Positions 1-19,241 of a stretch of 64,000 bases of DNA are shown piece by piece; the stretch's first letter is position 1, and each line of letters opens with the position of its first letter. The position numbers were made by a program, and so were the translations under genes. Below the pieces are notes generated by a model. That model saw only the letters and a list, made by a program, of their open reading frames with translations, made no database searches and was not told the DNA's origin. The stretch is from Camelus ferus (taxonomy: Eukaryota), in assembly GCF_009834535.1 (NCBI RefSeq), contig NC_045701.1, positions 32,798,001 to 32,862,000 of the forward strand, given 5' to 3'.

Positions 1-1804
1 CTTTCTTCTAGTGATTTTATTTCTAGGACTTTATCCTGCGTTAGGTCTAAAGTGTGTGTTTGTGGGGGGTGTATAAAAGGGTTACTCACAGAGATGTTCA
101 TCACACCATTACTTAATAAAAGATCTCAAAATGGAATCAGTGTTGATGTCCAAAATAGGGAGCTAGTAAAATATTACACATTCACATTGTATATCATGCA
201 GCCTTTACCGTCTACATTATCCCCACTCTAGAAACTAGGCTGAGAAAACAAAAGAACGAAATCTAGGCTAAGAACATTAGTAGGCAAGTTATTTTTAAAA
301 ACCTAATAAATATTTGAGGAAAAGCAAAAGCTCGCCAATTAATCAATGCAAATTAAAAATATTAACCATTTTGCTTATCTGATTGAAAAGGATGACAAAA
401 GTGATAATACTGAGATTCAGCAATTACACAGAGAAAGTGGCACTTTCACACCTGTACCTAAAGGTCCTAAAAAAAAACGGAAAAAGGAGTCTGATGTCGT
501 CATCAACCACACAGAGAAAAGTGGAGAAGGTAATGCCTAAACACCTTACACAAGTGACATCTTAGAAACAGTACTTAATCCAGCACTACATTGGGGATAA
601 GCTTTTAAAATTTTTTATAGCTTGAACGCTATGGAAACTTTAAAGTCACAACACAGAATGACATTTGCCATATGGAAGAATGTTCTCTAGGTACGTTCAG
701 GTCATAAGTAATGTATTTGACTACATGCCTGTTACTACACTTGAAAATTTAAATACTGGAATTAAGTGAATTTCCTCTACACTTGCATTTGATTCTGCCA
801 AGCACTTGGGAAACAGTTCATAAGCACATGAACGGAAGTTCAAGCTTGGGGAGTTCATGAAAGTCCAGGTAATTCCATCTTTCATGAAATTACATGCAAG
901 GATTAGCCGATTAACTCTTCGTTGTCAGTGTGAGCTTGTAGACCTACGAGTCCCCAGATCACCGCGCAGAGGGTCTGGTTAGAGCTGCTCGTGTGGGTCT
1001 TGGTCTGTCGTTTCCGTGCCGCTCACCTTACGTGCTCATCAAGAGAAGTTCAAATTTTGTGTGTTCAGTAAATTTCCTCAGAACAATAGTAGCTGTCTGA
1101 GTGAACTCCCATTGTTCCTTCAGTTGTGGCCTGGTAATCACTCTTGCTTTGGCAGTTCTTCAAAGCTTTGAAGAGTTTGAGACCTTTTCCTCGGGTTAGT
1201 TTTGGTTGTTTTTGGTAGGAAGATGGAGTGAAATCGCAGCCCCTGGCGATGCGCTGCTACCCATGTCTCAACTCCGATCACTGGGTGCCTATTTTCACTC
1301 CCCTTTCTTTGCACTCTATTCTTTATCCTTTTCTCTCTCTCTCTTCTTTTAAAGTTGTGTTAATGTTTTTAAAACAAAATAAAGTGCTGAAAAATTTAAG
1401 TAAGAATAAATTCAGATCTCCTAATGCTCAGGCACTTACACAGCTGTTACACTATTTCCCCTTTGCCCTGCTTTCTGCTTAGTACTTCTCAGATACAGAA
1501 ACACATTTCATGAGCTGTAACCATAATACAGCTAAGACACAATACATGTATTAGAGAAAGGACTAAGTTCTTTGCAGCTTTGAAGTAAGTGCTAAGCTGT
1601 GTGTGTTTACGGACAGGGAGAAAATCCTTAACTTTCATAAGATTTTCAAGAGGGCTTATCACAATTCATAAACAACTGAGAATTGCATTAGTTTCCTCTT
1701 CTGATATTTTTGCAACCATGTCCCTGTGGGACACAAAAGCCTTCACCCTGAGGAGGAAGCAGGAAAATTGGGGTCTTTCGCAGTGTCGTGATTTCCACTG
1801 AGTC

Positions 1805-2486
1805 TGTTGGGGCTCAAGTGACCTGGACGGTAACGGTCAGGGGCAGAGCCTCGTTCTTCCCTGCTCTTTCCCTGGCAGTGCCGTCCACCTGCTCAGGAGA
1901 GAGAGCTGCTCAATCTGCTTGACAAGTTCTAGAAAGAAGTGGAAGTAGCCATGGTCTGAGCAGGGGGCCAGGACAGATGAGAAGACAAGCAGGCTCCAGT
2001 CCCAGGGGGAGAGTGTATCCAGCAGGACCCTATGGGGCCTCCCTGGGACAGACCCCTCCCCCCACGCCCGGTCCTCTGCTGTGGCTCCCCTCTGAAGTGC
2101 CCAGATAATGTCCTATGCATGTTTCCTGAGGTTTCCGACGCTACAAACCTCCACCAAATGGAAAAAATGAACTATCTGATGATCATGAGCACGAGGCCCC
2201 CCCAGACCTTCTTGTCCTGAGGACTGATAATGTTAACAGCTGTGTTACCTCACGTCATCCAATCAGAGAACTGTGCATGAGCCGATCACACGCCCTGGGA
2301 CGCCCCTCCCTCACCTGGCCTTTAAAAATGCCTTGCTGAAACCTCTGGGGGCTTCCAGGGTTTTCAGACGTGTGTCCCCTGTTCTCCTTGCTCAGCCCTG
2401 CAGTACACCTTTCTCTGCTCCAAACTCGGACGTTTCTGTATTACTTGGCCTCATGGCGCCTGGCAGGCAAAACTGTGCTCGGAAGC
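1805..2486 (+). mobile_element. ERV1-like solo LTR directly upstream of the left cathepsin G gene (ends approximate)
   Basis: Starts tgttggggctc. Contains a CRE/CCAAT (cacgtcatccaatc, 2251-2264), a GC box, tttaaaaa and a degenerate polyA-region motif. Its 3' half resembles the LTR at 15209-15823. No TSD found. Confidence 0.6.
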
Positions 2487-2865
2487 GAGAGGAAATGAGG
2501 AAACAGACAGCTACCAGCTTTCAGGCTCCTTGGGAGGTTACTGAATTTGGTGGGTTTGGGGCTTTGGGACACAGCGCCCCAGCCCCCGTCCTTGTGGCCC
2601 TGGGTTCCCATTTCTGCTCCCGGCACCGACTCAGCAGCTCTACAGGGTATTGGGTGACAGCCTGGGGGGCCCTCTTTCCCCACACCACGGGCAGTTGGTG
2701 GGCTAGCCCCGTGGGCACCCTTGGGTGATGAAATCTAGCACAGCAGCAGGGGATGGGGCTGCGGATTCTCCAGCCCCCACCTCCCCCTTCCTTCCTCTCT
2801 CAGGGGCTCAAAGTCTGGCAGGAGGAAGCACCAGCAGCAACTGCCTGGCCGGCCTTCCCAGGAAG

Positions 2866-5435
2866 ATGCGGCCACTCCTGCTCCTGGTGGTCTTGCTCCT
2901 GCCCCCCAGGGCGAGGGCAGGTGAGTAACCTTCTCCGTCCCATAGACGCTGGGCCCAGACCGCCCAGGCACCTCCTAACGCTGTACCATTGGGCAGCTCA
3001 TGGGAGTTCACAGCTCCTCAGCTTTCTCATCTGTAAAACAGGGATTCTGTCAACGCCTACCTCAGAGAATCACTGAGAGTGAGAGTACCTCCCGCAGAGA
3101 AAGTTCTTGGAATTGCCCCTGGGATACAGTACTTTCTGTTCTCCGTGGCGGCGTCCACACTCCTTCTGCAGCTCATGGGGCAGAGCCTAGGAGAGGAAGA
3201 CACAGCGATAGCAGCCGCATCAGCCCACGTCTAGATCCTTAAACACCAGTCCCGTGCTGGGCCCGGGCGGGCCTTGAGCTGGACTCCCAGGGATCTGGGA
3301 CGCTCCCTGAGGAAGATAGTACCACAGAGGTTCAGGGAGAGGCCACTCCAGAGGGCTCTGGATTTGCCATCCTGACAGCAGAGAAACCCTCCTCCTTCTG
3401 GGGGCTGGACCTGGCCCTGCCTTGTGCGGAGGTGGGAGGGAGCAGAGGCTGGGATGGGGAGTCAGCAGTGCTTCCTGCAGAATCTGGAGCCCTCTCCCAG
3501 TGCTGCTGCTCTGCAGACCCCAATTCCCACCACCAACCTCCCCTGTGCCTCAATCATCTCTCCTGCATCCCAATCTTCCCGGCTTTCGGGAGTCACCAAA
3601 CTGATGCCCACATCCCCCCCCACCACCACCACCACCAGTGCAGAGATAAGTGCCTAATGCTTCCTTTCAGGGAAGATCATCGGAGGACAAGAAGCCAGGC
3701 CCCATTCCTTCCCCTACATGGCATATGTTCGCGGCCGAACTTCACTGGCTCTCATAACTTGTGGAGGATTCCTGGTGCGAGAAGACTTTGTCATGACAGC
3801 GGCTCACTGCTTGGGAAGGTGAGGAACTAAGGAGCTTCTGGCAGCCAGTAAGGCAGACCCAGAAGAGTTCACGAGGGGAGCCATCTGTAAGCAGGGTTCT
3901 AGCCAGGAAGGGGTCAAAAACAGACCAGGTGGGTCTTGGGGGCAGGGGGTGGCCAGTGCAAATGGGGAGAAAAGGAGGACGTGATAAAAAAAAAAGAGCA
4001 GAAGGGGAGATCGAAGGCACACATCAGGGCTCAGAATAGGGATTCAAGTTCTTTCTCTGTTATTCTGGGGGAGGCAAAACTTAAGAGCTCTGCGTACCCC
4101 AATCCCCAGCTCAAGGCTGGGGCACAGGTCAATCAGCCCCAACCCCACCCTCTCCTCAGTTCCCTCAGCTGCAGTCTCCTGCCTGGGCTGTTCCCCTGGC
4201 CCGCAGAGCTGTGGACCTGAGCTCCTGCAGCAGCTCATACCTACCTCTAGCCTCCCTTCCTCTGCAGCCAAATGAATGTGATCCTGGGGGCCCACAACAT
4301 CAGCAGGTCTGAAAGCACCCAGCAGCAAGTATCTGTGCGCAGAGCCATCCGCCACCCCAGATACAATCAGCAGAACAACCAGAACGACATCATGTTACTG
4401 CAGGTACCGCCTGCCTGACCCTCTGCTTCTTCAGCCCACATGGCTGCTCCCAGCTGGAGCCTCATGGGTCTGGGACCAGGGAGGAGGAAGCAGGGGGCAG
4501 ATGCCCAGGGCACTGGTGGGCACGGGGTGAGGTCGGCATACGTGGCCCCTGAGTGCCTGCCCTCCTCCGGCCAGCTGGCGAGCAGAGTCAGGCGGAATCG
4601 AGCCGTGATGCCAGTGGCCCTGCCTCAGAGCCAGAGCAGGCTGAGTCCGGGGACCGTGTGCACCGCGACCGGCTGGGGCCTGGTCGGCCTGAACAGGAGG
4701 ACAGACACACTCCGGGTTGTGCAGCTGAGAGTGCAGAGGGATGGGGAGTGTCACAGACGCTTCAGTTTCTACACTGGCCAAACGCAGATTTGTGTGGGGG
4801 ACCCAAGAGAAATGAAGTCTGCCTTCCTGGTAAGACCATGGGCATCACGAAACCCTGCATGAGACAGAAGGGGCTGGGCAGACTGGGTACTGGGGACAGA
4901 CTACATCCTTGTGGCCTCAGTCTGGAACCCAGACCAGAGTGAGGTGGGGGCTTTTCCCATCAATCCTGTCTCTGGGGACCAGGAGGAGCAGCAGACACAC
5001 AGGACACACAAGTGCAGCCTTCTCCTGGGGAGGGTGAATGTACCTTGACCTGGGTTGCCTGGAGAAGTAACCTCAGCCAGGGCTGAAGGCCAGTGATGGA
5101 AAAATCCAGAAGCTTGACTTCTGTACCCCCACCACCCAGCCATCTCACACACACCCAGCAATGGAAGGAGCCCACCCACCCCTGTCTTCTCTGAGGGCCA
5201 GACCTAGGGCAGCAGGAGTGGGAGCCCTGGAGGGGGGAGGCCTGGCTTAGCGTCCCTTCCTCTGTTTCCACAGGGAGACTCTGGAGGCCCCCTGGTGTGT
5301 AACAACATGGCCCAGGGCATTGTCTCCTATGGAAATCAGTTGGGAACTCCTCCAGCAGTCTTCACCAGGGTTTCCAGCTTCCAGCACTGGATAAGGAGAA
5401 CAATGAGACGCTTTGCAAAGCGGGGACCAGACTGA
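2866..5435 (+). CDS. CTSG: Cathepsin G, left-arm copy; intact, catalytic triad present, 251 aa
   Basis: Exons 2866-2920, 3671-3818, 4268-4403, 4575-4829, 5274-5435 (55/148/136/255/162 nt), all GT-AG. Signal [18 protein letters not shown], propeptide GK, mature [33 protein letters not shown]. Exon 4 [17 protein letters not shown] closely matches cathepsin G. AATAAA at 5499. Confidence 0.92.
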
Positions 5436-5498
5436 GACCCCACTGAAACTGACTCTTTCTGGGGCAGAGGCCAGCTCCACGGTGGTTCCCAGAGCCTT

Positions 5499-5504
5499 AA
5501 TAAA
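5499..5504 (+). terminator. Polyadenylation signal of the left CTSG
   Basis: AATAAA 64 nt after the stop codon. Confidence 0.7.
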
Positions 5505-5934
5505 TGTCTAAGCCTAGAGCCGAAATAACTGATTTCTCATTTGTTCGTAAACATGATTCAGAACACAATAAATGTACACCAGGACTGAGTCTGAGCTCCT
5601 CCCGGAAAATAGGGTCTCTTGCCCAGGACATGCAAACCCCTGTCCCTACCGTCCTGGGGGTCAGGATGAGCGTCCTCCCTTCCTCTGTCACTGCTCCACC
5701 CACAGCCTCAGGGAGTGATGGAGAGACATCTCTCTCCCCAGAGCAAGGCTCCTTATTGTTACCCTCCCAGAGACTCCCCGCTAGGTGTTAAGGTGTACCC
5801 CAAACCGTGTGCCATCGGCGTGGGTAGGACTGGCCGACCAAAGGAACAGAACTGAAATTCCACACGCGGCCCACTTTAACATGTGGGTCACGTGGCGTCT
5901 CAAATCACTGGGAAACAGTGAACTCTTAATAGAT

Positions 5935-6180
5935 GCTGTCTAAACAAACTGATAGTCATTTGGGGAGAAAAGATAAAGCTGGATCCGGGCTTCTCATCAT
6001 AAACCGAAATAACACCTCAAATGGGATCAAAGAGCTAAATGTGAAAAGTCACACCAAGCGAGTACTAGAAGAAAGACAAAAAATTTACTTTCGTAAAAAT
6101 ATCTAACAAACACCCATGTTGAAAGCAGCGCTATTCACGGTGGCCAAGAGATGGGAGCAACCCAAGTGTCTACGGACAGC
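5935..6180 (+). mobile_element. Old L1 3'-region remnant (mirrored at ~7520-7765)
   Basis: Resembles L1 ORF2 3'/3'UTR text (atcaaagagctaaatgtgaaa; gcagcgctattcacggtggccaagagatgggagcaacccaagtgtc). Confidence 0.5.
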
Positions 6181-6554
6181 TGGACCCTTTTCTCCTAAGC
6201 CCTTACCCACACCAGCCCCCACTGCGCTCTCGGCCGGTGTTCTCATTTTCAGTGTGACGAGGGTCTCCTTCTGGTTTTGTCACCCTAAAATTATACAAAA
6301 CTCTACACAATGTGTTCACTAAAATAAAATGACTTTTATGCTAAAGAATAGCCCATGACTACTACATCAATGTGGTAATCAAATAAAAGAGTTCTGAAGT
6401 CACATAATTTAAACCTAAACTTTTAACACCTTGAGGGAACGAGAAAGAACCAGCTGGGAGGTTCTTCTACATCCATCAAATGTTAACTACTCCTCACAGT
6501 GTGAATTTTGCCATCTCAACTTCTGCAGTGTCCATAATCTTAAATGGAATAATC

Positions 6555-7144
6555 TATAAACAGATATCAAATCCAACTGGCAATGGGTAGCCAGGGTCAC
6601 AATGGATAATGCATCTGACTGTGGATCAGAACATTTTAGTTTCACTCCTAGCTGGCTCGTTCCTCCTTTTAAATGCAATCTTCTTTAAATTGACATCCAA
6701 ATGAATTTTTTTTTTTTCAAAATGAAACTTTTTGGAATCCAACTGGCTATACATAGAAATGCTTTGGTAAATTTGATCATTCTTTTATAGACATTTCTTG
6801 TCAGAAAGTCATTTGCCTAGTGTTCAGTATAAGGATTTATTGACAAAATTTTAATCAACAATACATCTTTGCCAATACTCAGTTATTTTTGCTATATTTG
6901 CCACCACCTACGAATAGGAATTTTTTCTTACTTATATATTCTCAAGGAGAACAGTCTCATTATTAGATGTTTGCGTGGCACATGGAAAGCGCGCTTGCTG
7001 GTGGAAGGGGGAGGAGAGGGCAGAGGAAGAGCCCTGTTCCGTGCAGCCCTTCCTCCTTCTGACATTTACAGGAGGCCCGGAGCACCGACCTGGTCCCCAG
7101 CAAACTCCCAGGGGAGTGCGCTTTCCATTTGATTTGTGTTCAGT
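6555..7144. other. Unique 590-bp palindrome spacer
   Basis: Arm complementarity stops at aatggaataatc (6554) / gattattccatt (7145). The same spacer occurs reverse-complemented at 27706-28294. Confidence 0.93.
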
Positions 7145-8194
7145 GATTATTCCATTTAAGATAATGGACACTGCAGAAGTTGAGATGGCAAAATTCACAC
7201 TGTGAGGAGTAGTTAACATTTGATGGATGTAGAAGAACCTCCCAGCTGGTTCTTTCTCGTTCCCTCAAGGTGTTAAAAGTTTAGGTTTAAATTATGTGAC
7301 TTCAGAACTCTTTTATTTGATTACCACATTGATGTAGTAGTCATGGGCTATTCTTTAGCATAAAAGTCATTTTATTTTAGTGAACACATTGTGTAGAGTT
7401 TTGTATAATTTTAGGTTGACAAAACCAGAAGGAGACCCTCGTCACACTGAAAATGAGAACACCGGCCGAGAGCGCAGTGGGGGCTGGTGTGGGTAAGGGC
7501 TTAGGAGAAAAGGGTCCAGCTGTCCGTAGACACTTGGGTTGCTCCCATCTCTTGGCCACCGTGAATAGCGCTGCTTTCAACATGGGTGTTTGTTAGATAT
7601 TTTTACGAAAGTAAATTTTTTGTCTTTCTTCTAGTACTCGCTTGGTGTGACTTTTCACATTTAGCTCTTTGATCCCATTTGAGGTGTTATTTCGGTTTAT
7701 GATGAGAAGCCCGGATCCAGCTTTATCTTTTCTCCCCAAATGACTATCAGTTTGTTTAGACAGCATCTATTAAGAGTTCACTGTTTCCCAGTGATTTGAG
7801 ACGCCACGTGACCCACATGTTAAAGTGGGCCGCGTGTGGAATTTCAGTTCTGTTTCTTTGGTCGGCCAGTCCTACCCACGCCGATGGCACACGGTTTGGG
7901 GTACACCTTAACACCTAGCGGGGAGTCTCTGGGAGGGTAACAATAAGGAGCCTTGCTCTGGGGAGAGAGATGTCTCTCCATCACTCCCTGAGGCTGTGGG
8001 TGGAGCAGTGACAGAGGAAGGGAGGACGCTCATCCTGACCCCCAGGACGGTAGGGACAGGGGTTTGCATGTCCTGGGCAAGAGACCCTATTTTCCGGGAG
8101 GAGCTCAGACTCAGTCCTGGTGTACATTTATTGTGTTCTGAATCATGTTTACGAACAAATGAGAAATCAGTTATTTCGGCTCTAGGCTTAGACA

Positions 8195-8200
8195 TTTATT
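8195..8200 (-). terminator. Polyadenylation signal of the right CTSG
   Basis: tttatt on the plus strand = AATAAA on the minus strand. Confidence 0.7.
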
Positions 8201-8263
8201 AAGGCTCTGGGAACCACCGTGGAGCTGGCCTCTGCCCCAGAAAGAGTCAGTTTCAGTGGGGTC

Positions 8264-10827
8264 TCAGTCTGGTCCCCGCTTTGCAAAGCGTCTCATTGTT
8301 CTCCTTATCCAGTGCTGGAAGCTGGAAACCCTGGTGAAGACTGCTGGAGGAGTTCCCAACTGATTTCCATAGGAGACAATGCCCTGGGCCATGTTGTTAC
8401 ACACCAGGGGGCCTCCAGAGTCTCCCTGTGGAAACAGAGGAAGGGACGCTAAGCCAGGCCTCCCCCCTCCAGGGCTCCCACTCCTGCTGCCCTAGGTCTG
8501 GCCCTCAGAGAAGACAGGGGTGGGTGGGCTCCTTCCATTGCTGGGTGTGTGTGAGATGGCTGGGTGGTGGGGGTACAGAAGTCAAGCTTCTGGATTTTTC
8601 CATCACTGGCCTTCAGCCCTGGCTGAGGTTACTTCTCCAGGCAACCCAGGTCAAGGTACCTTCACCCTCCCCAGGAGAAGGCTGCACTTGTGTGTCCTGT
8701 GTGTCTGCTGCTCCTCCTGGTCCCCAGAGACAGGATTGATGGGAAAAGCCCCCACCTCACTCTGGTCTGGGTTCCAGACTGAGGCCACAAGGATGTAGTC
8801 TGTCCCCAGTACCCAGTCTGCCCAGCCCCTTCTGTCTCATGCAGGGTTTCGTGATGCCCATGGTCTTACCAGGAAGGCAGACTTCATTTCTCTTGGGTCC
8901 CCCACACAAATCTGCGTTTGGCCAGTGTAGAAATCGAAGCGTCTGTGACACTCCCCATCCCTCTGCACTCTTAGCTGCACAACCCGGAGTGTGTCTGTCC
9001 TCCTGTTCAGGCCGACCAGGCCCCAGCCGGTCGCGGTGCACACGGTCCCCGGACTCAGCCTGCTCTGGCTCTGAGGCAGGGCCACTGGCATCACGGCTCG
9101 ATTCCGCCTGACTCTGCTCGCCAGCTGGCCGGAGGAGGGCAGGCACTCAGGGGCCACGTATGCCGACCTCACCCCGTGCCCACCAGTGCCCTGGGCATCT
9201 GCCCCTGCTTCCTCCTCCCTGGTCCCAGACCCATGAGGCTCCAGCTGGGAGCAGCCATGTGGGCTGAAGAAGCAGAGGGTCAGGCAGGCGGTACCTGCAG
9301 TAACATGATGTCGTTCTGGTTGTTCTGCTGATTGTATCTGGGGTGGCGGATGGCTCTGCGCACAGATACTTGCTGCTGGGTGCTTTCAGACCTGCTGATG
9401 TTGTGGGCCCCCAGGATCACATTCATTTGGCTGCAGAGGAAGGGAGGCTAGAGGTAGGTATGAGCTGCTGCAGGAGCTCAGGTCCGCAGCTCTGCGGGCC
9501 AGGGGAACAGCCCAGGCAGGAGACTGCAGCTGAGGGAACTGAGGAGAGGGTGGGGTTGGGGCTGATTGACCTGTGCCCCAGCCTTGAGCTGGGGATGGGG
9601 GTATGCAGAGCTCTTAAGTTTTGCCTCCCCCAGAATAACAGAGAAAGAACTTGAATCCCTATTCTGAGCCCTGATGTGTGCCTTCGATCTCCCCTTCTGC
9701 TCTTTTTTTTTATCACGTCCTCCTTTTCTCCCCATTTGCACTGGCCACCCCCTGCCCCCAAGACCCACCTGGTCTGTTTTTGACCCCTTCCTGGCTAGAA
9801 CCCTGCTTACAGATGGCTCCCCTCGTGAACTCTTCTGGGTCTGCCTTACTGGCTGCCAGAAGCTCCTTAGTTCCTCACCTTCCCAAGCAGCGAGCCGCTG
9901 TCATGACAAAGTCTTCTCGCACCAGGAATCCTCCACAAATGGTTGCCCCCACTTGAGTCTGGATCTGAACATATGCCATGTAGGGGAAGGAATGGGGCCT
10001 GGCTTCTTGTCCTCCGATGATCTTCCCTGAAAGGAAGCATTAGGCACTTATCTCTGCACTGGTGGTGGTGGGGGGGGGGGGGATGTGGGCATCAGTTTGG
10101 TGACTCCCGAAAGCCGGGAAGATTGGGATGCAGGAGAGATGATTGAGGCACAGGGGAGGTTGGTGGTGGGAATTGGGGTCTGCAGAGCAGCAGCACTGGG
10201 AGAGGGCTCCAGATTCTGCAGGAAGCACTGCTGACTCCCCATCCCAGCCTCTGCTCCCTCCCACCTCCCCACAAGGCAGGGCCAGGTCCAGCCCCCAGAA
10301 GGAGGAGGGTTTCTCTGCTGTCAGGATGGCAAATCCAGAGCCCTCTGGAGTGGCCTCTCCCTGAACCTCTGTGGTACTATCTTCCTCAGGGAGCGTCCCA
10401 GATCCCTGGGAGTCCAGCTCAAGGCCCGCCCGGGCCCAGCACGTGACTGGTGTTTAAGGATCTAGACGTGGGCTGATGCGGCTGCTATCGCTGTGTCTTC
10501 CTCTCCTAGGCTCTGCCCCACGAGCTGCAGAAGGAGTGTGGACGCCACCGAGAACAGCAAGTACTGTATCCCAGGGGCAATTCCAAGAGCTTTCTCTGCG
10601 GGAGGTACTCTCACTCTCAGTGATTCTCTGAGGTAGGCGTTGACAGAATCCCTGTTTTACAGATGAGAAAGCTGAGGAGCTGTGAACTCCCATGAGCTGC
10701 CCAATGGTACAGCGTTAGGAGGTGCCTGGGCGGTCTGGGCCCAGCGTCTATGGGACGGAGAAGGTTACTCACCTGCCCTCGCCCTGGGGGGCAGGAGCAA
10801 GACCACCAGGAGCAGGAGTGGCCGCAT
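8264..10827 (-). CDS. CTSG: Cathepsin G paralog, right-arm copy; open ORF but catalytic His57->Arg (predicted inactive protease)
   Basis: Exons 10827-10773, 10026-9879, 9430-9295, 9124-8870, 8425-8264, all GT-AG and in frame. TAARC (CGC at 9892-9890) replaces TAAHC. Confidence 0.9.
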
Positions 10828-11206
10828 CTTCCTGGGAAGGCCGGCCAGGCAGTTGCTGCTGGTGCTTCCTCCTGCCAGACTTTGAGCCCCTGAGAGAGGA
10901 AGGAAGGGGGAGGTGGGGGCTGGAGAATCCGCAGCCCCATCCCCTGCTGCTGTGCTAGATTTCATCACCCAAGGGTGCCCACGGGGCTAGCCCACCAACT
11001 GCCCGTGGTGTGGGGAAAGAGGGCCCCCCAGGCTGTCACCCAATACCCTGTAGAGCTGCTGAGTCAGTGCCGGGAGCAGAAATGGGAACCCAGGGCCCCA
11101 AGGACGGGGGCTGGGGCGCTGTGTCCCAAAGCCCCAAACCCACCAAATTCAGTAACCTCCCAAGGAGCCTGAAAGCTGGTAGCTGTCTGTTTCCTCATTT
11201 CCTCTC

Positions 11207-11887
11207 GCTTCCGAGCACAGTTTTGCCTGCCAGGCGCCATGAGGCCAAGTAATACAGAAACGTCCGAGTTTGGAGCAGAGAAAGGTGTACTGCAGGGCTG
11301 AGCAAGGAGAACAGGGGACACACGTCTGAAAACCCTGGAAGCCCCCAGAGGTTTCAGCAAGGCATTTTTAAAGGCCAGGTGAGGGAGGGGCGTCCCAGGG
11401 CGTGTGATCGGCTCATGCACAGTTCTCTGATTGGATGACGTGAGGTAACACAGCTGTTAATATTATCAGTCCCCAGGACAAGAAGGTCTGGGGGCCTCGT
11501 GCTCATGATCATCAGATAGTTCATTTTTTCCATTTGGTGGAGGTTTGTAGCGTCGGAAACCTCAGGAAACATGCATAGGACATTATCTGGGCACTTCAGA
11601 GGGGAGCCACAGCAGAGGACCGGGCGTGGGGGGAGGGGTCTGTCCCAGGGAGGCCCCATAGGGTCCTGCTGGATACACTCTCCCCCTGGGACTGGAGCCT
11701 GCTTGTCTTCTCATCTGTCCTGGCCCCCTGCTCAGACCATGGCTACTTCCACTTCTTTCTAGAACTTGTCAAGCAGATTGAGCAGCTCTCTCTCCTGAGC
11801 AGGTGGACGGCACTGCCAGGGAAAGAGCAGGGAAGAACGAGGCTCTGCCCCTGACCGTTACCGTCCCAGGTCACTTGAGCCCCAACA
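11207..11887 (-). mobile_element. ERV1-like solo LTR (mirror of 1805-2486)
   Basis: Reverse complement of the left-arm LTR. Confidence 0.6.
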
Positions 11888-14800
11888 GACTCAGTGGAAA
11901 TCACAACACTGCGAAAGACCCCAATTTTCCTGCTTCCTCCTCAGGGTGAAGGCTTTTGTGTCCCACAGGGACATGGTTGCAAAAATATCAGAAGAGGAAA
12001 CTAATACAATTCTCAGTTGTTTATGAATTGTGATAAGCCCTCTTGAAAATCTTATGAAAGTTAAGGATTTTCTCCCTGTCCGTAAACACACACAGCTTAG
12101 CACTTACTTCAAAGCTGCAAAGAACTTAGTCCTTTCTCTAATACATGTATTGTGTCTTAGGTGTATTATGGTTACAGCTCATGAAATGTGTTTCTGTATC
12201 TGAGAAGTACTAAGCAGAAAGCAGGGCAAAGGGGAAATAGTGTAACAGCTGTGTAAGTGCCTGAGCATTAGGAGATCTGAATTTATTCTTACTTAAATTT
12301 TTCAGCACTTTATTTTGTTTTAAAAACATTAACACAACTTTAAAAGAAGAGAGAGAGAGAAAAGGATAAAGAATAGAGTGCAAAGAAAGGGGAGTGAAAA
12401 TAGGCACCCAGTGATCGGAGTTGAGACATGGGTAGCAGCGCATCGCCAGGGGCTGCGATTTCACTCCATCTTCCTACCAAAAACAACCAAAACTAACCCG
12501 AGGAAAAGGTCTCAAACTCTTCAAAGCTTTGAAGAACTGCCAAAGCAAGAGTGATTACCAGGCCACAACTGAAGGAACAATGGGAGTTCACTCAGACAGC
12601 TACTATTGTTCTGAGGAAATTTACTGAACACACAAAATTTGAACTTCTCTTGATGAGCACGTAAGGTGAGCGGCACGGAAACGACAGACCAAGACCCACA
12701 CGAGCAGCTCTAACCAGACCCTCTGCGCGGTGATCTGGGGACTCGTAGGTCTACAAGCTCACACTGACAACGAAGAGTTAATCGGCTAATCCTTGCATGT
12801 AATTTCATGAAAGATGGAATTACCTGGACTTTCATGAACTCCCCAAGCTTGAACTTCCGTTCATGTGCTTATGAACTGTTTCCCAAGTGCTTGGCAGAAT
12901 CAAATGCAAGTGTAGAGGAAATTCACTTAACTCCAGTATTTAAATTTTCAAGTGTAGTAACAGGCATGTAGTCAAATACATTACTTATGACCTGAACGTA
13001 CCTAGAGAACATTCTTCCATATGGCAAATGTCATTCTGTGTTGTGACTTTAAAGTTTCCATAGCGTTCAAGCTATAAAAAATTTTAAAAGCTTATCCCCA
13101 ATGTAGTGCTGGATTAAGTACTGTTTCTAAGATGTCACTTGTGTAAGGTGTTTAGGCATTACCTTCTCCACTTTTCTCTGTGTGGTTGATGACGACATCA
13201 GACTCCTTTTTCCGTTTTTTTTTAGGACCTTTAGGTACAGGTGTGAAAGTGCCACTTTCTCTGTGTAATTGCTGAATCTCAGTGTTATCATTTTTGTCAT
13301 CCTTTTCAATCAGATAAGCAAAATGGTTAATATTTTTAATTTGCATTGATTAATTGGCGAGCTTTTGCTTTTCCTCAAATATTTATTAGGTTTTTAAAAA
13401 TAACTTGCCTACTAATGTTCTTAGCCTAGATTTCGTTCTTTTGTTTTCTCAGCCTAGTTTCTAGAGTGGGGATAATGTAGACGGTAAAGGCTGCATGATA
13501 TACAATGTGAATGTGTAATATTTTACTAGCTCCCTATTTTGGACATCAACACTGATTCCATTTTGAGATCTTTTATTAAGTAATGGTGTGATGAACATCT
13601 CTGTGAGTAACCCTTTTATACACCCCCCACAAACACACACTTTAGACCTAACGCAGGATAAAGTCCTAGAAATAAAATCACTAGAAGAAAGAGAGAAATA
13701 ATGTAAACACACACAGAAATCGTTCCAAGGAGCCACCCAGGGCAGTCCGGTCTTCATGAAGCTACAGTCTTTATATGGTAATAGTTTTCCTCCTAATCTA
13801 CCTCACACTATGTCAAGTCCTACTGCCAGGTGTAAGGGGGCAGGCTGACCCGTCAGACACCGCCTCGCAAGTCCACACACCCTTGCCCGTAGCGGTGGAT
13901 ATCCTTGGCCACTCTGCCGCTGGTTCTGGCTCACACCCTGGGACAGACTTATCTTTATTTATATTACATGTAGGGGCATGAACCTCAGTCCAGAAACCCA
14001 GGAAATGCCTCGTTTCAAGGGGAAGACAGTTTGCTGTGACCCAGATGTCCTGTATCTATCAAACAGTACCGCCAGTGAGTTGGATGTGACAGAACACAAC
14101 AAATTCACAGTAACTGGACAAACACTGAATTGAGTGAGATGAACATCAAGAAGAGAAGGCTCTAAAAACAATAGCAAATGAATCACATGTGTATGAAAGC
14201 AAAATCCAGCACCCTCAAAAATAAGACGAAAAGAAATTGAAACACTGTAACTGACTATACTTCAATAAGAATTTTTTAAATTAAGAAAATACTGTATAAA
14301 GGAAATAAAAGCTTATGCTTCCCACAAGACAGCCCATAAGGCCTTCTGCTGAGTCTTCCCCGGAGCTCACAGCCCCCGCAGAGGCACATTTGAGAGAAGA
14401 GTTGGATGAGGGTCCAGGGGAACGTAGAAGAAATTTCTCATCACTGTAAGTTTCCCAATGACGGGGACAGAGCCTGTTATGTGCTGGCACAAAGAGAGGG
14501 ATCAACCCTTGACTACTGATGGATGGCGAAGTGGTGCTTTCCTGCCCAGCAGCCCTGGGTCCCTTTGGCTCACAAGGCTGCCATATCCCAGGCCGCCAGC
14601 AGGGGGAGGCAGGGGTCTGAGTCCAGGACAGGCTGAAGGCCTGAGGCTGCTGGGAGTCTCCACAGGCCTTGGTGCTGCCTAAGCCCCTGGGGCGTGCTGG
14701 GCTGGACCGAGGGCCTGAGCTGGCCTGCCCAGGTGGGAGGTGGGTTCTGGCTTCTCTGATAAGCACCAGGTGGGCTGGCAGCTCAGCTAAGGCAGGGACA

Positions 14801-15208
14801 AGCAGTGGAGGAGAACTCACACGGGCAATGGGACCTCTGCTGGGGAGAAGGCAGGGAGGCTGTCTCAAGGCAGGGTGAGCAGGCAGGGAAAGGAGCTGGT
14901 GGCCAGGGCCCTCAAATGGAAAACAGGGGCTGGTGTGGGCCGGTCAGTCAGGGAGCAAGGCTGACTGAGCTCAGTGCCGGGAGCAGAGCAGGACATGGGA
15001 CCAGGGGAGGCTGAGGGCCATTGTGGGAGCATCCCAGCCTCCTAAGCTATGGCCAGTGCTGGTTACAGGGGAAGCCTGCCCTCACCGGAGAGAGGCCCTG
15101 GAAACAGGAAACTGAGTGTCCCTGGTATGGCCCCTGACCTCCTGGGTTCCTGGATTCACCCTCCTTCCGCTGACCTGCTCTTTACTCTGCCGATTGCCGA
15201 GGGGTTGA

Positions 15209-15823
15209 TGACAGATGTGGCTTAGAGAAGCTAAGAGGTTCCCGAGGCCCAGAGAGGACCACTCTGGGGGAGAGAAGGCTGTCCTTTTCTAATGGACAGT
15301 CCTTTAGACTCAGCCCTTGCAGAAGGATAAGCACCAAAGACGTGTAACTGGGAAATCAACTGTAACCCAGAAGGATCCCATGGGGCCTTCCCGGGGGTGG
15401 GGGGTGGGGGCAGACCCCTCCCCCATAGGCTCTGCTGGAGCTCCTCTCTGAAGTACCCAGATAATAGTATCTCCTGCATATTTCCTGAGTTTTTCAGATG
15501 CTCAAAACCACCACCAGATTGAAGAAATTAACCACTTGATGATCAAGCGTAAGTAGCACACAGACCTGGCATCTAAGGATCAACCACCATCAACTAATCA
15601 GAGGACTGTGCACAGCTGAGCACACACCCTGGGCCGCCCCACCCTCAGCGAGCCTTTAAAAAGGCTCAGCTGAAAGCCTTTGGGGAGTTTGGGATTTGAG
15701 GAACATGAGCCACGGGTTCTCTTGGCTCGGCCCTGCAACAAACCTTTCTCCGCTCCAAACTCCAACGTTTTAGTTTGTTTGGACTCACGGTGCGTCGGGC
15801 ACAGGAGCTTGCATTCAGTAACA
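15209..15823 (+). mobile_element. ERV1-like solo LTR downstream of GZMH (5' end approximate)
   Basis: Ends ..tcagtaaca. Contains cctttaaaaa and ccctgcaacaaacctttctccgctccaaactcc, shared with the 1805-2486 element. Confidence 0.6.
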
Positions 15824-15995
15824 CAATGAGACTCTAGACAGACAGCATGGGATTTAGGGCGGAGCGAGGCCTGGGGAGAAAGGCAGAAGCAGAACCCCGA
15901 GCTGGCAGCAGAGGGCTGCCTGGGGCAGGGCTGTTGCATATCAGAAGTGGTCGCTGAATAAACAGGAATTCAGTCATCTTTGCTCTAGAGATCCC

Positions 15996-16001
15996 TTTAT
16001 T
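15996..16001 (-). terminator. GZMH polyadenylation signal
   Basis: AATAAA on the minus strand ~95 nt after the stop. Confidence 0.65.
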
Positions 16002-16096
16002 ATGGCCCTGCGATCCCACTGCCAACCCCTATGGGATTCTTGCCGCTGCCCCAGGAAGATGGCCAGCCCACAAAAAGGTGAGTCTCCAGCTTGCTG

Positions 16097-19038
16097 TTAG
16101 AGGCGCTTCATTGTTCTCTTTATCCAGGGCAGGAAGTGGGAGACCTTGGTGAAGACTCCTGGAGGTGTCCCGTTCTGTTTCCCACAGGAGAAAATGCCCT
16201 GGACCAGGTTTTTGCACACGAGGGGCCCTCCGGAGTCGCCCTGTGGGCAGAGAGAGGAAGGACTGAGGGTCCTCAGCGGGGCCCGCCCTCCCTGGAGCCT
16301 GGGGCTGGGTGCTGTCTGTCAGGGACCAGGGCAGGGTCCCAGGGCTCCCGTCTGGCTCTAACTGGTCTTTACTGAGACCCAGGCCAACCTTTCTTCTCAG
16401 TCCTCATGGAAACTCTGCTGATAACACAGCTGCCACATGACTGATCCTTCCGCCCCCTCCACCCTGACCCACTCAGGAAAAATGTCTAAAGTGTGGACTC
16501 ATGGACCAGGCTGCCCAAGCCCTCGGGCTGAGGAATGAAGATGGCCTCTCCCCAGCCCCAGACCTTCCCTGAGTTCTGCTCCCCGGGGCCTGTGTGCCTA
16601 GATGCTGGAAACCTGACCTTGAAGCTGGTCTTCACCGTGCTCGGGTCCCCCACACAAATCTGGGTGGCGCGGCTGTAATAGCCTGGGAAGAGGGATTCGC
16701 ACACACGATCTTCCTGCACCGTCAGCACTGCCTCCTGCAGAGTGGTGGCTGGAACGCCCACCGCCACCTGCCCCCAGCCGGCCACACCGCACGCCTGTCC
16801 TGGCTTCACCCGGGCCCGGTCCCCGGGCAGCCTGAGGGGCCTCACAGCTGCCGTCTGCTTGGCCTTTCTCTGCAGCTGATGGGGAGAGACAGGGTCCAGC
16901 TCAGCCAGTGGCCTCCGGGCCGGGACACTGCAGTGAGACCGCAGAGCCCTCGCTCTCACCTGAGCCCCGGGGACAGGTCGGGCGGCCAGGACGGGAGGGA
17001 GGAAAGGGACTGGTTGCAGTGGGAGGGGAGACAGTGTGTCTCCAGGAGGGCAGAGAAGCGGGGAGGTTCCTTACCTGCAGTAACATGATGTCACTGGAGT
17101 GGTCCTTAGGATTATAGTCTGGGTGGGGGATGGCTCTTCTCACTGGGACCACCTGCTGGGTCCCCTCCTGCTTCTTGATGTTGTGGGCCCCCAGGGTGAC
17201 ATTGATTGAGCTGCACAGAGAGCAGAGAGCGTGTGGGGAGTGTGGTGTCACAGGAGGGCCAGCCCCAGAGCCGTGCGGGGTTGGTGACACGGGGGCAGAG
17301 CAGGGCTGCAGCTGAGGGGAAATTGAGGCCACAGAAGGTCCTGGGGCGGAGTGACGCCCTGCCGTGTGCTTCTCAATGACATGAAGGCAGGGACATGATG
17401 GAGCTTTCTCAGCAGTATCGTGAAATTTCTCTGAGTTTGCACTTTGACTTCAATGCGTGCTTTCTTCCTCACTGATGCTGCTTTTGGCCGGTCGGGTCCC
17501 CGCCTTCTCACCTATGCGTGTTGCTCTCACCTCTGATCCCCGGACCTCGAAACTTACTGCCCTGTTTCTCAGCTTCTCATCACCTTAGTCCTGCCGTCAG
17601 ATGGTCGTCTGATGAGCTCTCTCGGTCTTGTGTTATGAGAAGCTGCGGGCCCTCCCTGGGCTCGGCCCCCCGGCAGAGGATGGGGTCCCTGCGGGGGTGT
17701 CAGCAGGGGAAGGCTGGCTGCTGCCCCTCACCTTCCCCTGCAGTGAGCAGCCGTCAGAACAAAGTCCTTCTGCACGAGGACACCGCCACACCGCCTCATC
17801 CTCTCCTGATCCAGAAACTGAACGAACGCCATGTAGGGGCGGGAGTGGGGCTTGGCCTCGTGGCCCCCGATGATCTCCCCTGAAAGAGAGGGCTGGGAGA
17901 CAGGGTGACGGGGGCGGCTGTGGTCAGGAGCGAAAATCAGGAAGGTGGCGTTTGAGGTGTGTCCACAGAGCCCTGCAGACCCCAGGGGAGAGTCCTCCAG
18001 GTTCTCTTTGCAACAGAGTAACATTTTCTAACCTCAAGCCTCAGACTCCCCCTCGGAGAAAGGGGGTCAGCTTGTCCTTCACGTCCTGCTTCAGACACGT
18101 TCGTGGCGGAGGCAAGGTCTGCCTTCAACGTGGTGGAGCCCCGGAGAATGGTGGACAGGACTCCCTGATGAGCCTTCGCTCCCTGCGGGTCTCCCTGACT
18201 ACTCTGAGCCTCTGTTAGCAGATTGATAGGTGTCCTTTTCTAATAATCTTCCTACGAGCTTACGGAGTGGGATTCTCTGAAATCCTCGTGTCCTAGGGCC
18301 TAACACACCCTAGGGTTGCAGTGAACACTCCGGCTGCATGAGTGATAGCCTCCAGTTGGCTTTTGGCTGAAGTTTGGCAGGGACGGCGCTGGTGGATTCA
18401 AGGGCACAGGGGTGGGGAGGGCACTGCCAAAGGCACTGGGGCCACTGAGGGCCTGGGAGGCAGGGGAGGTGGGACTGGAAGTGGGCTGTGTGGGGCCGGG
18501 GCAGAGCTTAGCACCCGGAGAGCTTTGGGTGCTGCCATCCTGCCACTTCTGATCCATCGCACCCTGGGCTCCTGTCCTGGGCAGGACCGAGGGGTGGGGG
18601 GCCCTGAGAGACTTCACCGGTCCTTGAGCTGGGTCCACTGACCACTCCCAGCCTGCAGTGACTTCGGCTGAGCTGCCCTTTCCCGGGTTGGAGTGAGGGG
18701 TTTTACTTACTTGGTTTTTGTAGCTTCACATCCTCTGCCAAATGCACAACCCACTTTCCCGGTGTGAGAGAGAGAGAGAGAGGGGCTGTGCCCTGCTAAA
18801 GCTTCCAGTGAGCACCCTTCCTTCCTGCCATCCGCCCATGTGAATGTCTGGGCGGCATCGAACTTGTTTGTCTGGGTTTGGGCCTGGAGCTGGGGTTCAG
18901 AAATTGGAGCTGGGCAGGAGGGTCAGGAGAACAGGGGGCTTAGTGAGATGGACCCAGGCCCGAGGAATGGGGATTGTCACTCACCTGTCCCCGCCCGGCG
19001 GGCAGAAGAACGGCCATCACGAGCAGGAGTGGCTGCAT
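16097..19038 (-). CDS. GZMH: Granzyme H, copy A; exons 2-5 intact, exon 1 is 54 nt instead of 55 (frameshift as written)
   Basis: Exons 19038-18985, 17879-17732, 17210-17075, 16875-16618, 16240-16097. [37 protein letters not shown]|[20 protein letters not shown]1 residues T189/G216/G226, as in granzyme H. Confidence 0.85.
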
Positions 19039-19211
19039 CTTCCCTGAAAGTCTGCGCAGGTTGAGCTGCTGGTCTTCCTTCCTTCCAGACACAAAGCCCA
19101 GGGGACCGGAGGAGGGGAGGCTCAGCCCGGCACAGACTCCTGGGCCGGATGTCAGCCAGCAACGTGAGGGTCCCTGGTCCCTGCCTTGGGCTGGGTGAGA
19201 AGGGCGCTGTC

Positions 19212-19241
19212 ACCACACTTGCCCTCCCACTGCTGAGTCAC
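19212..19241 (-). promoter_or_regulatory. GZMH proximal promoter: RUNX site (ACCACA, 19212-19217) and AP-1/MARE site (TGCTGAGTCAC, 19231-19241)
   Basis: Consensus motifs ~180-200 nt upstream of the ATG. Confidence 0.5.

What the first reader, a model, noticed from the sequence alone, without database searches (positions are those of the whole stretch)
3730..3759. Hyper-diverged 10-codon island in otherwise near-identical palindrome arms
Seen: left arm cgc ggc cga act tca ctg gct ctc ata act ([10 protein letters not shown]) versus right arm, 9967-9938, cag atc cag act caa gtg ggg gca acc att ([10 protein letters not shown]). That is 17 of 30 nt different and 9 of 10 residues changed, while the flanking exon and introns are almost invariant. 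Established: this is the 34-41 loop before Cys42, which lines the prime-side subsites and contacts inhibitors. Inference: either an old allele protected from homogenising conversion by selection, or a micro-conversion from a diverged donor not in this window. Either way it looks like a cassette-like specificity switch between two palindrome-linked proteases.
Basis: partly seen in the sequence, partly recalled or inferred. Interest (0 to 1): 0.8.

Follow-up and report, generated by a model that had tools for sequence, protein, structure and literature searches.

The report
Conversion-resistant loop in camel cathepsin G
Two mirror-image cathepsin G genes in camels keep copying each other into near-identity, yet a 28-base stretch for an active-site loop and two other active-site codons have stayed different in all three camel species. 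The result is one active enzyme with a remodelled loop and one catalytically dead copy that keeps the ancestral loop.

Summary
Window 3731-3758 differs from its mirror 9939-9966 at 17 of 28 bases, against 29 substitutions in the other ~6,540 arm bases (binomial P ~2e-33).

The window is Camelus ferus chromosome CM020773.1. The two genes are cathepsin G (CTSG) copies lying tail to tail in a palindrome with arms of at least 12.9 kb.

- **Shared palindrome:** the same palindrome, with the same spacer, is found in Bactrian camel, dromedary and alpaca.
- **Concerted evolution:** arms within a species differ at 0.04-0.37%. Dromedary and Bactrian arms differ at about 0.55%, and camel and alpaca arms at 4.2%.
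- **Fixed paralog differences:** apart from the arm/spacer edge, only three places differ between arms in all three Camelus species: the patch, His57Arg and Ser/Asp173.
- **Polarity:** copy B ([10 protein letters not shown], Arg57, Asp173) keeps the ancestral artiodactyl loop. Copy A ([10 protein letters not shown], His57) carries a camelid-only loop that diverged in place and is also present in alpaca, where both arms are A-type.
- **No donor cassette** was found.

The "old difference shielded from conversion by selection" reading is supported. The "micro-conversion from a donor" and "two proteases with switched specificity" readings are not, because B lacks the catalytic histidine.

Arg57 CTSG-like paralogs also occur in other Laurasiatheria. 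This is a new example of a known phenomenon.

The parts
3730..3759 (+). Patch, version A: ten codons [10 protein letters not shown], residues 34-41 (with two inserted residues) before Cys42 of cathepsin G copy A. This is the derived, camelid-specific loop.
   Evidence: Shared with dromedary; Bactrian has one change; alpaca has three changes and carries it on both arms.
9938..9967 (-). Patch, version B: [10 protein letters not shown] in copy B. This is the ancestral-type artiodactyl CTSG loop.
   Evidence: Identical in the right arm of all three Camelus species. 8/10 residues match hippo and beaked whale. 6/30 bases differ from hippo.
31087..31116 (-). The same B-type patch in copy C, which belongs to the second version of the locus after the 100-N gap.
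3805..3807 (+). Codon CAC, catalytic His57 of copy A. Its mirror at 9890-9892 reads CGC (Arg) in copy B.
   Evidence: The difference is fixed between arms in three Camelus species.
4764..4766 (+). Codon AGT (Ser, about residue 173) in copy A. Its mirror at 8933-8935 reads GAT (Asp) in copy B, and alpaca has AAT (Asn) on both arms.
2866..5435 (+). Cathepsin G copy A. Exons are 2866-2920, 3671-3818, 4268-4403, 4575-4829 and 5274-5435. It encodes 251 codons with an intact triad.
   Evidence: PDB matches. The product matches the last 251 residues of the 297-residue model XP_014413194.2, which carries a 46-residue N-terminal extension.
8264..10827 (-). Cathepsin G-like copy B. Exons are 10827-10773, 10026-9879, 9430-9295, 9124-8870 and 8425-8264. 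The 251-codon frame is intact; residue 57 is Arg.
   Evidence: The product matches the last 251 residues of XP_032337679.1.
1..6572 (+). Left palindrome arm. It is cut by the window start and continues at least 6.3 kb further upstream.
6573..7126 (.). Unique 554-base spacer.
   Evidence: In three individuals a spacer contig ends at the mirror positions 6506 and 7193.
7127..20003 (-). Right palindrome arm. It matches the reverse complement of the left arm at 99.43% over 12.9 kb, up to the N run.

Best explanation
The window holds a camelid palindrome with arms of at least 12.9 kb and a 554-base spacer. Its two arms each carry a cathepsin G gene, tail to tail.

Arm-to-arm gene conversion keeps the arms nearly identical within each species. 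Three small coding islands resist it in Camelus: the 28-base loop patch (residues 34-41), the catalytic codon 57, and the codon at about residue 173.

Copy B keeps the ancestral states ([10 protein letters not shown] loop, Asp173) but has Arg57, so it cannot be an active serine protease. Copy A keeps His57 and carries a loop that diverged in place in the camelid stem lineage. That loop changed at about 12 of 30 bases relative to a hippo-like ancestor, and this loop is hypervariable across the whole family.

Chromosomes on which a conversion tract crosses one of these islands are removed by selection. A B-to-A tract would kill the active enzyme. An A-to-B tract would erase whatever the dead copy does. 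In the alpaca lineage the A-to-B event did become fixed, leaving two identical A-type genes.

- **Shown:** the palindrome, the concerted evolution, the cross-species fixation of the islands, the polarity of the loop, and transcription of A.
- **Inferred:** that selection rather than a mechanical barrier maintains the islands, and that B has a non-catalytic function.
For: **Cluster of differences.** 17 of 28 bases differ against 0.44% elsewhere in the arms.

**Shared palindrome.** The window equals L005 of C. ferus. The same palindrome and spacer occur in Bactrian camel, dromedary and alpaca. Five arm-edge differences at 6555-6565 are shared by all four species.

**Concerted evolution over 8,197 background sites.**
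- Arm versus arm: 8 differences in dromedary, 3 in alpaca, 15 in Bactrian, 30 in C. ferus.
- Dromedary versus C. ferus or Bactrian arms: 42-51 differences.
- Camelus versus alpaca arms: 341-349 differences.

**Site classes in the eight-arm alignment.**
- 24 sites are fixed between arms in all three Camelus species: 16 in the patch, 3806, 4764/4765, and 5 at the spacer edge.
- About 30 substitutions specific to dromedary or to the Bactrian lineage are present on both arms. Examples are 3538 and 3621 upstream of the patch and 4740, which lies 24 bases before the Ser/Asp codon.
- All non-boundary fixed sites lie in the 756 coding bases, about 9% of the aligned arm, and all change the protein.

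**Grouping at the patch.** A-type arms differ by 0-3 bases, alpaca included. B-type arms are identical to each other. A and B differ by 16-17.

**Polarity.** The hippo patch differs from B at 6 of 30 bases and from A at 12-13 of 30, and A keeps the ancestral GTGG.TCTCA stretch. Hippo and warthog also differ at 12 of 30 in the patch against 10 of 118 in the rest of exon 2, so this loop is a general hotspot.

**Open frames and expression.** All eight arm copies have intact 251-codon frames. A spliced exon 2-exon 3 contig from an RNA run carries the A version with His57.

**Arg57 elsewhere.** Arg57 CTSG-like proteins are found in cattle, goat, hippo, a beaked whale, pig, horse, rhinoceros and bats. 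Hippo versus goat Arg57 copies give dN/dS 0.37 over exons 4-5.
Against: - No read-level proof of the B version was obtained. In Logan contigs of three individuals and one RNA run, only the A version was laid on the B reference. These contigs drop variants, and the tool silently removes human-like records, so this is not evidence of absence. It does leave open that some animals carry A on both arms.
- The intact frame of B is not independent evidence of function, because conversion from A would keep repairing it.
- A 57%-diverged patch could block heteroduplex formation on its own, and His57Arg lies only 48 bases from it. Strictly, then, only the Ser/Asp173 island requires selection.
- The C. 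ferus left arm carries many private differences that may be assembly errors.
- Expression of B, and any activity or binding of either protein, was not tested.
Confidence: 0.72

Rival explanations
1. Mechanical barrier only. The patch persists because a heteroduplex with 17 mismatches in 28 bases is rejected by mismatch repair, so conversion tracts stop at its edges. No selection on either protein is needed.
For: The island is sharply bounded, and flanks are identical within 106 bases upstream and 48 bases downstream. His57Arg sits in the patch's shadow.
Against: - Tracts that start outside and run across the patch would still replace it, and this did happen in alpaca, where both arms are A-type.
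- The Ser/Asp173 dinucleotide is 1 kb away, has no flanking divergence, and sits 24 bases from a site that was homogenised in dromedary.
- All non-boundary fixed differences are non-synonymous coding changes, although about 91% of the arm is non-coding.
Confidence: 0.13
2. Donor cassette. The A-type loop was pasted into one arm in the camelid stem lineage by a micro-conversion or templated repair from a diverged sequence elsewhere in the genome.
For: There are twelve to thirteen changes in 30 bases against about 10% in the rest of exon 2 relative to hippo (Fisher P 9e-5 to 3e-4), with multiple hits per codon, and eight of the differences from the hippo loop lie in the 5' half.
Against: - No 10-mer of the patch recurs in the 64-kb window.
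- Nothing within 6 mismatches of the 30-mer occurs in the fetched loci outside the CTSG genes themselves.
- No non-camelid protein among the roughly 300 retrieved shares more than 4 of 10 loop residues.
- The 3' half keeps ancestral bases.
- Hippo and warthog are just as diverged in this loop (12 of 30), so ordinary fast evolution is sufficient.
Confidence: 0.1
3. Artefact or alleles. The two versions are haplotypes of a single-copy gene that the assembler placed as an inverted duplicate.
For: The window does contain a probable false duplication: version 2 after the 100-N gap differs mainly by 1-base indels. Only the A version was seen in Logan contigs.
Against: - Four assemblies from four species and four projects show the same palindrome, and three of them have A on one arm and B on the other.
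- Both dromedary arms share dromedary-specific substitutions.
- The spacer contig ends at mirror positions in three individuals, and arm depth is 1.5-1.6 times spacer depth.
- A 2013 C. ferus gene model carries both loops.
Confidence: 0.03

Closest known systems
Primate L/M (red/green) opsin genes: gene conversion with spectral-tuning sites kept distinct (from general knowledge)
   Same: Neighbouring duplicates are homogenised by conversion across introns and most exons, while a few function-defining codons stay paralog-specific across species because of selection.
   Different: Here the duplicates are inverted arms of a palindrome rather than tandem copies. One island is a contiguous 28-base block rather than single codons. 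One partner is catalytically dead.
Large sex-chromosome palindromes (human Y P1-P8, primate X palindromes) with arm-to-arm gene conversion (from general knowledge)
   Same: Arm identity above 99%, a unique spacer, conservation of the palindrome across species while the arms evolve in concert, and spacer inversion (seen here between the two versions of the locus).
   Different: This palindrome is autosomal and sits in the chymase locus, its arms are small (about 13 kb or more), and it carries immune protease genes. A protein-coding island that resists conversion is the main feature.
Human cathepsin G (PDB 1CGH, 1AU8, 8D4S and others)
   Same: It is the best solved-structure match for exons 2 and 4 (E 2e-18 to 4e-28). 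The five-exon layout, IIGG start, triad and Cys42 context are the same.
   Different: Camel copy A has a completely different 34-41 loop. Both camel copies have Ser189/Gly216/Ala226 and Leu192 where human has Ala/Gly/Glu and Lys192 (human states from memory and PMC5898719, PMC8537139). That predicts plain chymotryptic rather than dual specificity.
Azurocidin / heparin-binding protein, the catalytically dead neutrophil serine protease homolog (from general knowledge)
   Same: A granule protease homolog with a substituted triad residue and an intact frame. It is a possible model for what copy B and the other Arg57 CTSG-like proteins do.
   Different: It lies in a different locus and subfamily and has different triad substitutions. 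No functional data exist for the Arg57 proteins.
Arg57 cathepsin G-like proteins of other Laurasiatheria (for example goat XP 'cathepsin G isoform X1', hippo 'cathepsin G-like', horse 'cathepsin G')
   Same: They share Arg at residue 57, mostly Asp at about residue 173, and an ancestral-type QIQT/QTLT loop.
   Different: In hippo and goat the gene has no partner within 10 kb. In the protein tree the camel pair forms its own clade. Common origin versus repeated His-to-Arg change is therefore unresolved.

Membership tests
Cathepsin G (chymase-locus S1 serine protease) | Five-exon gene with the family's exon sizes and GT-AG introns | tested here: met
   Exons of 55/148/136/255/162 bases, all introns GT-AG, in all eight arm copies.
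Cathepsin G (chymase-locus S1 serine protease) | Closest solved relative is cathepsin G rather than a granzyme or chymase | tested here: met
   For exon 4, E is 4e-28 for cathepsin G against 4e-16 for granzyme H. For B-type exon 2 the best hit is cathepsin G at 2e-18. Annotated orthologs are named cathepsin G or cathepsin G-like.
Cathepsin G (chymase-locus S1 serine protease) | Catalytic triad His57/Asp102/Ser195 | tested here: met
   Copy A has AAHC, NDIMLL and GDSGGP. Copy B does not meet this feature, because residue 57 is Arg.
Palindrome evolving in concert by arm-to-arm gene conversion | Inverted arms above 99% identical around a unique spacer | tested here: met
   Arm identity is 99.1-99.9% in four species, with a spacer of 552-554 bases.
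Palindrome evolving in concert by arm-to-arm gene conversion | The palindrome is orthologous between species, yet arms are closer within a species than between species | tested here: met
   The alignment runs collinearly through the spacer, and the arm-edge differences are shared. Within-species arm differences are 3-30, against 42-51 between Camelus lineages and about 345 to alpaca, over 8,197 sites.
Palindrome evolving in concert by arm-to-arm gene conversion | Lineage-specific substitutions present on both arms | tested here: met
   About 30 such sites, derived in dromedary or in the Bactrian lineage as polarised by alpaca. At protein level D169N and H236P are on both dromedary copies.
Selection-maintained islands inside converting duplicates (opsin-like case) | The same paralog-specific states are fixed across several species while the flanks are homogenised | tested here: met
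   16 patch sites, 3806 and 4764/4765 are fixed in three Camelus species. The nearest homogenised sites are 3621 and 4740.
Selection-maintained islands inside converting duplicates (opsin-like case) | The islands alter function | not testable with these tools
   The positions map to the 34-41 loop, catalytic residue 57 and about residue 173, by alignment to human cathepsin G. Their roles in the substrate cleft come from general knowledge of the chymotrypsin fold.
Catalytically dead protease homolog with retained function (pseudoprotease) | Triad residue replaced, frame intact, state conserved across species | tested here: met
   Arg57 with an intact 251-codon frame in three Camelus species. 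Arg57 is also found in at least ten other Laurasiatherian species. dN/dS between the hippo and goat Arg57 copies is 0.37.
Catalytically dead protease homolog with retained function (pseudoprotease) | Expressed, and acting without catalysis | not tested
   Only an A-type transcript contig was seen, at low depth.

The most novel reading that the evidence does not exclude
Copy B is the camel member of an ancient, Laurasiatheria-wide lineage of Arg57 cathepsin G-like pseudoproteases. It keeps the ancestral substrate cleft and acts without catalysis, for example as a binding, decoy or antimicrobial granule protein. On this reading the three islands are the last remnants of the identity of two old paralogs that a camelid palindrome has otherwise fused by gene conversion. 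Selection would then be actively holding apart a dead and a live enzyme that differ at only 11 residues.
Probability: 0.3. Interest if true: 0.8.

Novelty: new member of a known kind. Interest (0 to 1): 0.62.

Why it matters
This locus shows selection and gene conversion working against each other at base-pair resolution in an immune gene.

- **Scale.** About 8 kb of aligned arm is homogenised within roughly a million years (a rough inference). Yet 19 bases in three active-site positions have held for at least the 4-5 million years (date from memory) since dromedary and Bactrian camels split. At least the loop has held since before camels and alpacas split.
- **A natural experiment.** Nature has in effect picked out 11 residues that distinguish the two proteins. 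Alpaca supplies the case in which the distinction was erased.
- **What camels actually have.** Camels lack a conventional active cathepsin G. The active copy has a remodelled prime-side loop, and the ancestral-looking copy is dead.
- **A wider, undescribed protein group.** Arg57 cathepsin G-like proteins are widespread in hoofed mammals and bats, and the only horse and rhinoceros cathepsin G sequences retrieved here are of this kind. They are not discussed in the main review of the locus (PMC8537139).

Tried and rejected
- **Looking for the B version in reads.** I laid Logan contigs of three DNA runs and one RNA run on the B arm. Only the A version appeared. I do not take this as absence: contigs pop bubbles, the tool drops human-like records, and a short exon-2 contig with the ancestral loop is the kind of record likely to be dropped. 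The caps on the look-up of sequencing runs and read laying were then exhausted, so B-specific words could not be searched.\n- **Donor search.** No 10-mer of the patch recurs in the window. The exon-2 loops of paralogs in the window are all different. A phmmer search of A-type exon 2 against 1.84 billion representatives gave a best single-domain identity of 79%, meaning the flanks only. A region-restricted search with P0272 residues 72-112 found only camel proteins with the loop. A fuzzy search of all fetched loci found nothing.\n- **Frameshift origin.** I checked by eye whether a compensated frameshift or a local inversion could turn B into A. Neither is more parsimonious than substitutions, so I dropped it.\n- **Is the palindrome ancestral to artiodactyls?** I looked for a tail-to-tail partner of the Arg57 gene in hippo and goat. 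None lies within 10 kb. The look-up of hippo P0160 found no record.\n- **Protein tree of 60 CTSG-like sequences.** Camelids, pigs, bats and perissodactyls each cluster by lineage. The tree therefore cannot separate one ancient Arg57 origin plus conversion from repeated origins.\n- **Literature.** Nothing was found on camelid cathepsin G, on Arg57 paralogs, or on palindromes in the chymase locus.
Full report
**1.

The two 30-mers are at the stated coordinates and translate as stated. The window begins inside a large inverted repeat. Arm 1-6572 pairs with 7127-13691 around a 554-base spacer.

A global alignment of the arms gives 59 differing columns. Seventeen are substitutions inside 3731-3758. 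Twenty-nine are substitutions spread over the other ~6,540 bases, and the rest are small indels. At the background rate, 0.12 differences are expected in 28 bases, so the binomial probability of 17 or more is 2e-33. The flanks are identical from 3626 to 3730 and from 3759 to 3805.

**2. What the genes are**

The left arm carries an intact five-exon gene: 2866-2920, 3671-3818, 4268-4403, 4575-4829 and 5274-5435. All introns are GT-AG, it has 251 codons, and it has His57, Asp102 and Ser195. The right arm carries its mirror image, also intact. The two products differ at 11 residues: nine in the patch, His57Arg (CAC versus CGC), and Ser versus Asp at about residue 173 (AGT versus GAT).

Solved-structure searches place both copies closest to human cathepsin G. 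Exon 4 scores E 4e-28, against 4e-16 for granzyme H. The alignment shows the patch is the ten residues immediately before Cys42, which is the 34-41 loop.

The B loop [10 protein letters not shown] shares five residues with human QIQSPAGQSR, and the A loop shares none.

**3. Other copies in the window**

The B-type 30-mer recurs at 31087-31116. It belongs to a second version of the locus (27603-46532) that follows a 100-N gap.

- This version equals 7127-25406 at 99.2-99.8% identity.
- Within the arm it differs from copy B only by 17 one-base indels, two of which break the frame.
- Its spacer and the inner ~290 bases of the arms are flipped.

I read it as a second assembly of the same region, either a haplotig or a false duplication. 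It does not affect the argument.

**4. Is the patch real outside this assembly?**

*The A version.* A query made only of 31-mers that overlap the A patch is held at 1.00 by DNA runs from three organism labels, many samples and at least eight studies, and by two RNA runs.

*Contigs laid on the B arm.* I laid the contigs of three of those DNA runs and one RNA run on 6400-10100.
- Each individual gives one spacer contig that ends exactly at the mirror positions 6506 and 7193.
- Each gives one arm contig at 1.5-1.6 times the spacer depth. This is the graph shape expected of a true palindrome with collapsed arms.
- The arm contig carries the A letters at every patch site and at the His57 site. At ordinary arm differences it is a mosaic of the two arms.
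- The RNA run gives a spliced exon 2-exon 3 contig of the A type.
- No B-type contig was laid.

These contigs drop variants, and the tool removes human-like records without notice. This therefore shows that A is present and transcribed, and it says nothing about B.

*The B version.* Its reality rests on annotated assemblies.
- RefSeq holds an A-type and a B-type protein for each of C. ferus, C. bactrianus and C. dromedarius.
- A 2013 C. ferus gene model (EPY82662.1) carries both loops one after the other. That is the signature of both branches of a bubble having been assembled in series.

**5. The cross-species test**

I fetched the loci encoding these proteins. The window is C. ferus GCA_009834535.1, chromosome CM020773.1 (100% identity).

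*The palindrome is shared.* All four species (C. ferus, Bactrian camel, dromedary, alpaca) have the same palindrome with the same spacer. The arms extend to at least 12.9 kb: window 7127-20003 matches the reverse complement of L005 964-13845 at 99.43%.

*The arms evolve in concert (8,197 background sites).*

| Comparison | Differences |
|---|---|
| Alpaca, arm versus arm | 3 |
| Dromedary, arm versus arm | 8 |
| Bactrian, arm versus arm | 15 |
| C. ferus, arm versus arm | 30 |
| Dromedary versus C. ferus or Bactrian arms | 42-51 |
| Camelus versus alpaca arms | 341-349 |

*Site classes.*
- About 30 substitutions that are derived in dromedary or in the Bactrian lineage, as polarised by alpaca, sit on both arms.
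- Only 24 sites are fixed between arms in all three Camelus species: 16 in the patch, 3806, 4764/4765, and five at the very edge of the spacer. Alpaca shares those five, which confirms a single origin of the palindrome.
- The seventeenth patch site, 3745, is G in the Bactrian A arm and in alpaca, so Leu44 is a recent change.
- Homogenised sites lie as close as 3621 (110 bases before the patch) and 4740 (24 bases before the Ser/Asp codon).

*At the patch itself.* The A arms of all four species differ by 0-3 bases. The three B arms are identical. A and B differ by 16-17.

*Alpaca.* It has the A type (RGRTSVALKT), His57 and Asn173 on both arms.

**6. Polarity and origin of the two versions**

*B is ancestral.* Among about 300 retrieved family members, the B loop shares 8 of 10 residues with hippo and beaked whale and 7 of 10 with pig. 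The A loop shares at most 4 of 10 with anything outside camelids.

*A diverged in place.* At DNA level the hippo patch differs from B at 6 of 30 bases, from the Bactrian and alpaca A versions at 12 of 30, and from the C. ferus A version at 13 of 30. A retains the ancestral GTGG.TCTCA stretch, which B has lost. So both versions descend from one ancestral loop, and A is not a foreign cassette.

*The rate is not exceptional.* The excess of A-lineage change over the rest of exon 2 is significant (Fisher P 9e-5 to 3e-4). But hippo and warthog are equally diverged in this loop (12 of 30, against 10 of 118 in the flanks). The loop is therefore a general hotspot of the family.

*No donor.* None was found in the window, the loci or the protein collections.

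*The third island supports an early split.* Asp (GAT) in B and in many relatives, Asn (AAT) in alpaca and Ser (AGT) in Camelus A form a one-step series. This again places the A/B split before camels and alpacas diverged.

**7. Why the islands persist**

*The case for selection.*
- All non-boundary fixed differences fall in the 756 coding bases, about 9% of the aligned arm. All are non-synonymous. For two to three independent islands this has a chance probability of roughly 0.008 to 0.0008 (my inference).
- Background arm divergence is 0.04-0.18% in three species, against about 0.55% between the two Camelus lineages. This implies that a neutral arm difference survives on the order of a million years. 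The islands have survived in two lineages since their split (my inference; dates from memory).

*The case for a mechanical barrier.* Heteroduplex rejection could help at the patch, and might shelter His57Arg 48 bases away. It cannot explain the isolated Ser/Asp dinucleotide, nor the erasure of all three islands in alpaca.

I therefore favour selection against conversion tracts that cross these sites (confidence about 0.7).

**8. What copy B is**

With Arg57 it cannot be an active serine protease. The "two proteases with switched specificity" reading therefore fails.

Arg57 is not a camel oddity.
- Arg57 cathepsin G-like proteins occur in yak, goat (codon CGC), hippo (CGA), a beaked whale, pig, horse, rhinoceros and several bats.
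- The horse, rhinoceros and bat proteins also have Thr in place of Ser195.
- Most of them have Asp at about residue 173.
- The hippo and goat Arg57 copies give dN/dS 0.37 over exons 4-5.

In the protein tree the ruminant and whippomorph Arg57 copies form their own clade. Camelid, pig, bat and perissodactyl copies cluster by lineage. Hippo and goat have no partner gene within 10 kb. One ancient origin blurred by conversion and repeated His-to-Arg changes therefore both remain possible.

The main review of the locus mentions neither camelids, nor Arg57 copies, nor conversion.

**9. Verdict**

It is an old, selection-protected island of paralog identity inside a concertedly evolving camelid palindrome. 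It separates an active cathepsin G with a remodelled 34-41 loop from a dead copy with the ancestral loop.

The phenomenon is of a known kind: conversion with function-defining sites held apart, as in primate opsins, and palindromes with arm-to-arm conversion. This instance appears to be undescribed.

Still open are read-level genotypes of the B version, expression of B, and the biochemical consequences of the differences.

Noticed in passing
window 27603-46532 (gap 27502-27601): A second version of the locus. It is 99.2-99.8% identical to 7127-25406 and follows a 100-N gap. Within the palindrome arm it differs from copy B only by 17 one-base indels, which break the frame of copy C in exons 4 and 5. 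The spacer plus the inner ~290 bases of the arms are flipped. It looks like a haplotig or false duplication that records a spacer-inversion polymorphism.
   Followed up: partly
window 13692-20003 and upstream of the window (L005 964-7273): The palindrome is much larger than the 13.7 kb visible in the window, with arms of at least 12.9 kb at 99.43% identity. Each arm also carries a granzyme H-like gene; the right-arm copy lies at about 16108-19090.
   Followed up: partly
proteins P0151-P0154, P0180, P0193, P0199, P0209, P0216, P0291; loci L008, L009: Cathepsin G-like proteins with Arg in place of catalytic His57 occur in yak, goat, hippo, a beaked whale, pig, horse, rhinoceros and bats. The horse, rhinoceros and bat proteins also have Thr in place of Ser195. 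The only horse and rhinoceros cathepsin G sequences retrieved are of this dead type. dN/dS between the hippo and goat copies is 0.37 over exons 4-5.
   Followed up: partly
window 20889-22613 and 42039-43762 (-): A cathepsin G/duodenase-like paralog whose mature N-terminus reads IIRG instead of IIGG. Its loop [10 protein letters not shown] shares only its first four residues with the B patch.
   Followed up: no
protein P0185 (EPY82662.1, C. ferus 2013): An older gene model contains both loop versions in tandem (...[32 protein letters not shown]...). This is most likely both bubble branches assembled in series. It is incidental evidence that one animal carried both versions.
   Followed up: no
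window 5274-5435 and 4575-4829 (both copies): Camel cathepsin G has Ser189/Gly216/Ala226 and Leu192, where human has Ala/Gly/Glu and Lys192. The propeptide is Gly-Lys rather than Gly-Glu. This predicts plain chymotryptic specificity and a changed preference for acidic P2' residues.
   Followed up: no
window 20004-20152 and 41154-41302: Two N runs of identical length (149) sit at the same relative position in the two versions of the locus.
   Followed up: no
left arm of C. ferus (for example window 401, 1686, 3104, 3135, 3427, 4101, 4212, 5039): The C. ferus left arm has many private single-base differences not seen in any other arm of any species. They may be real recent mutations or consensus errors. 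They inflate the C. ferus arm divergence: 30 differences, against 8-15 in the other camels.
   Followed up: no
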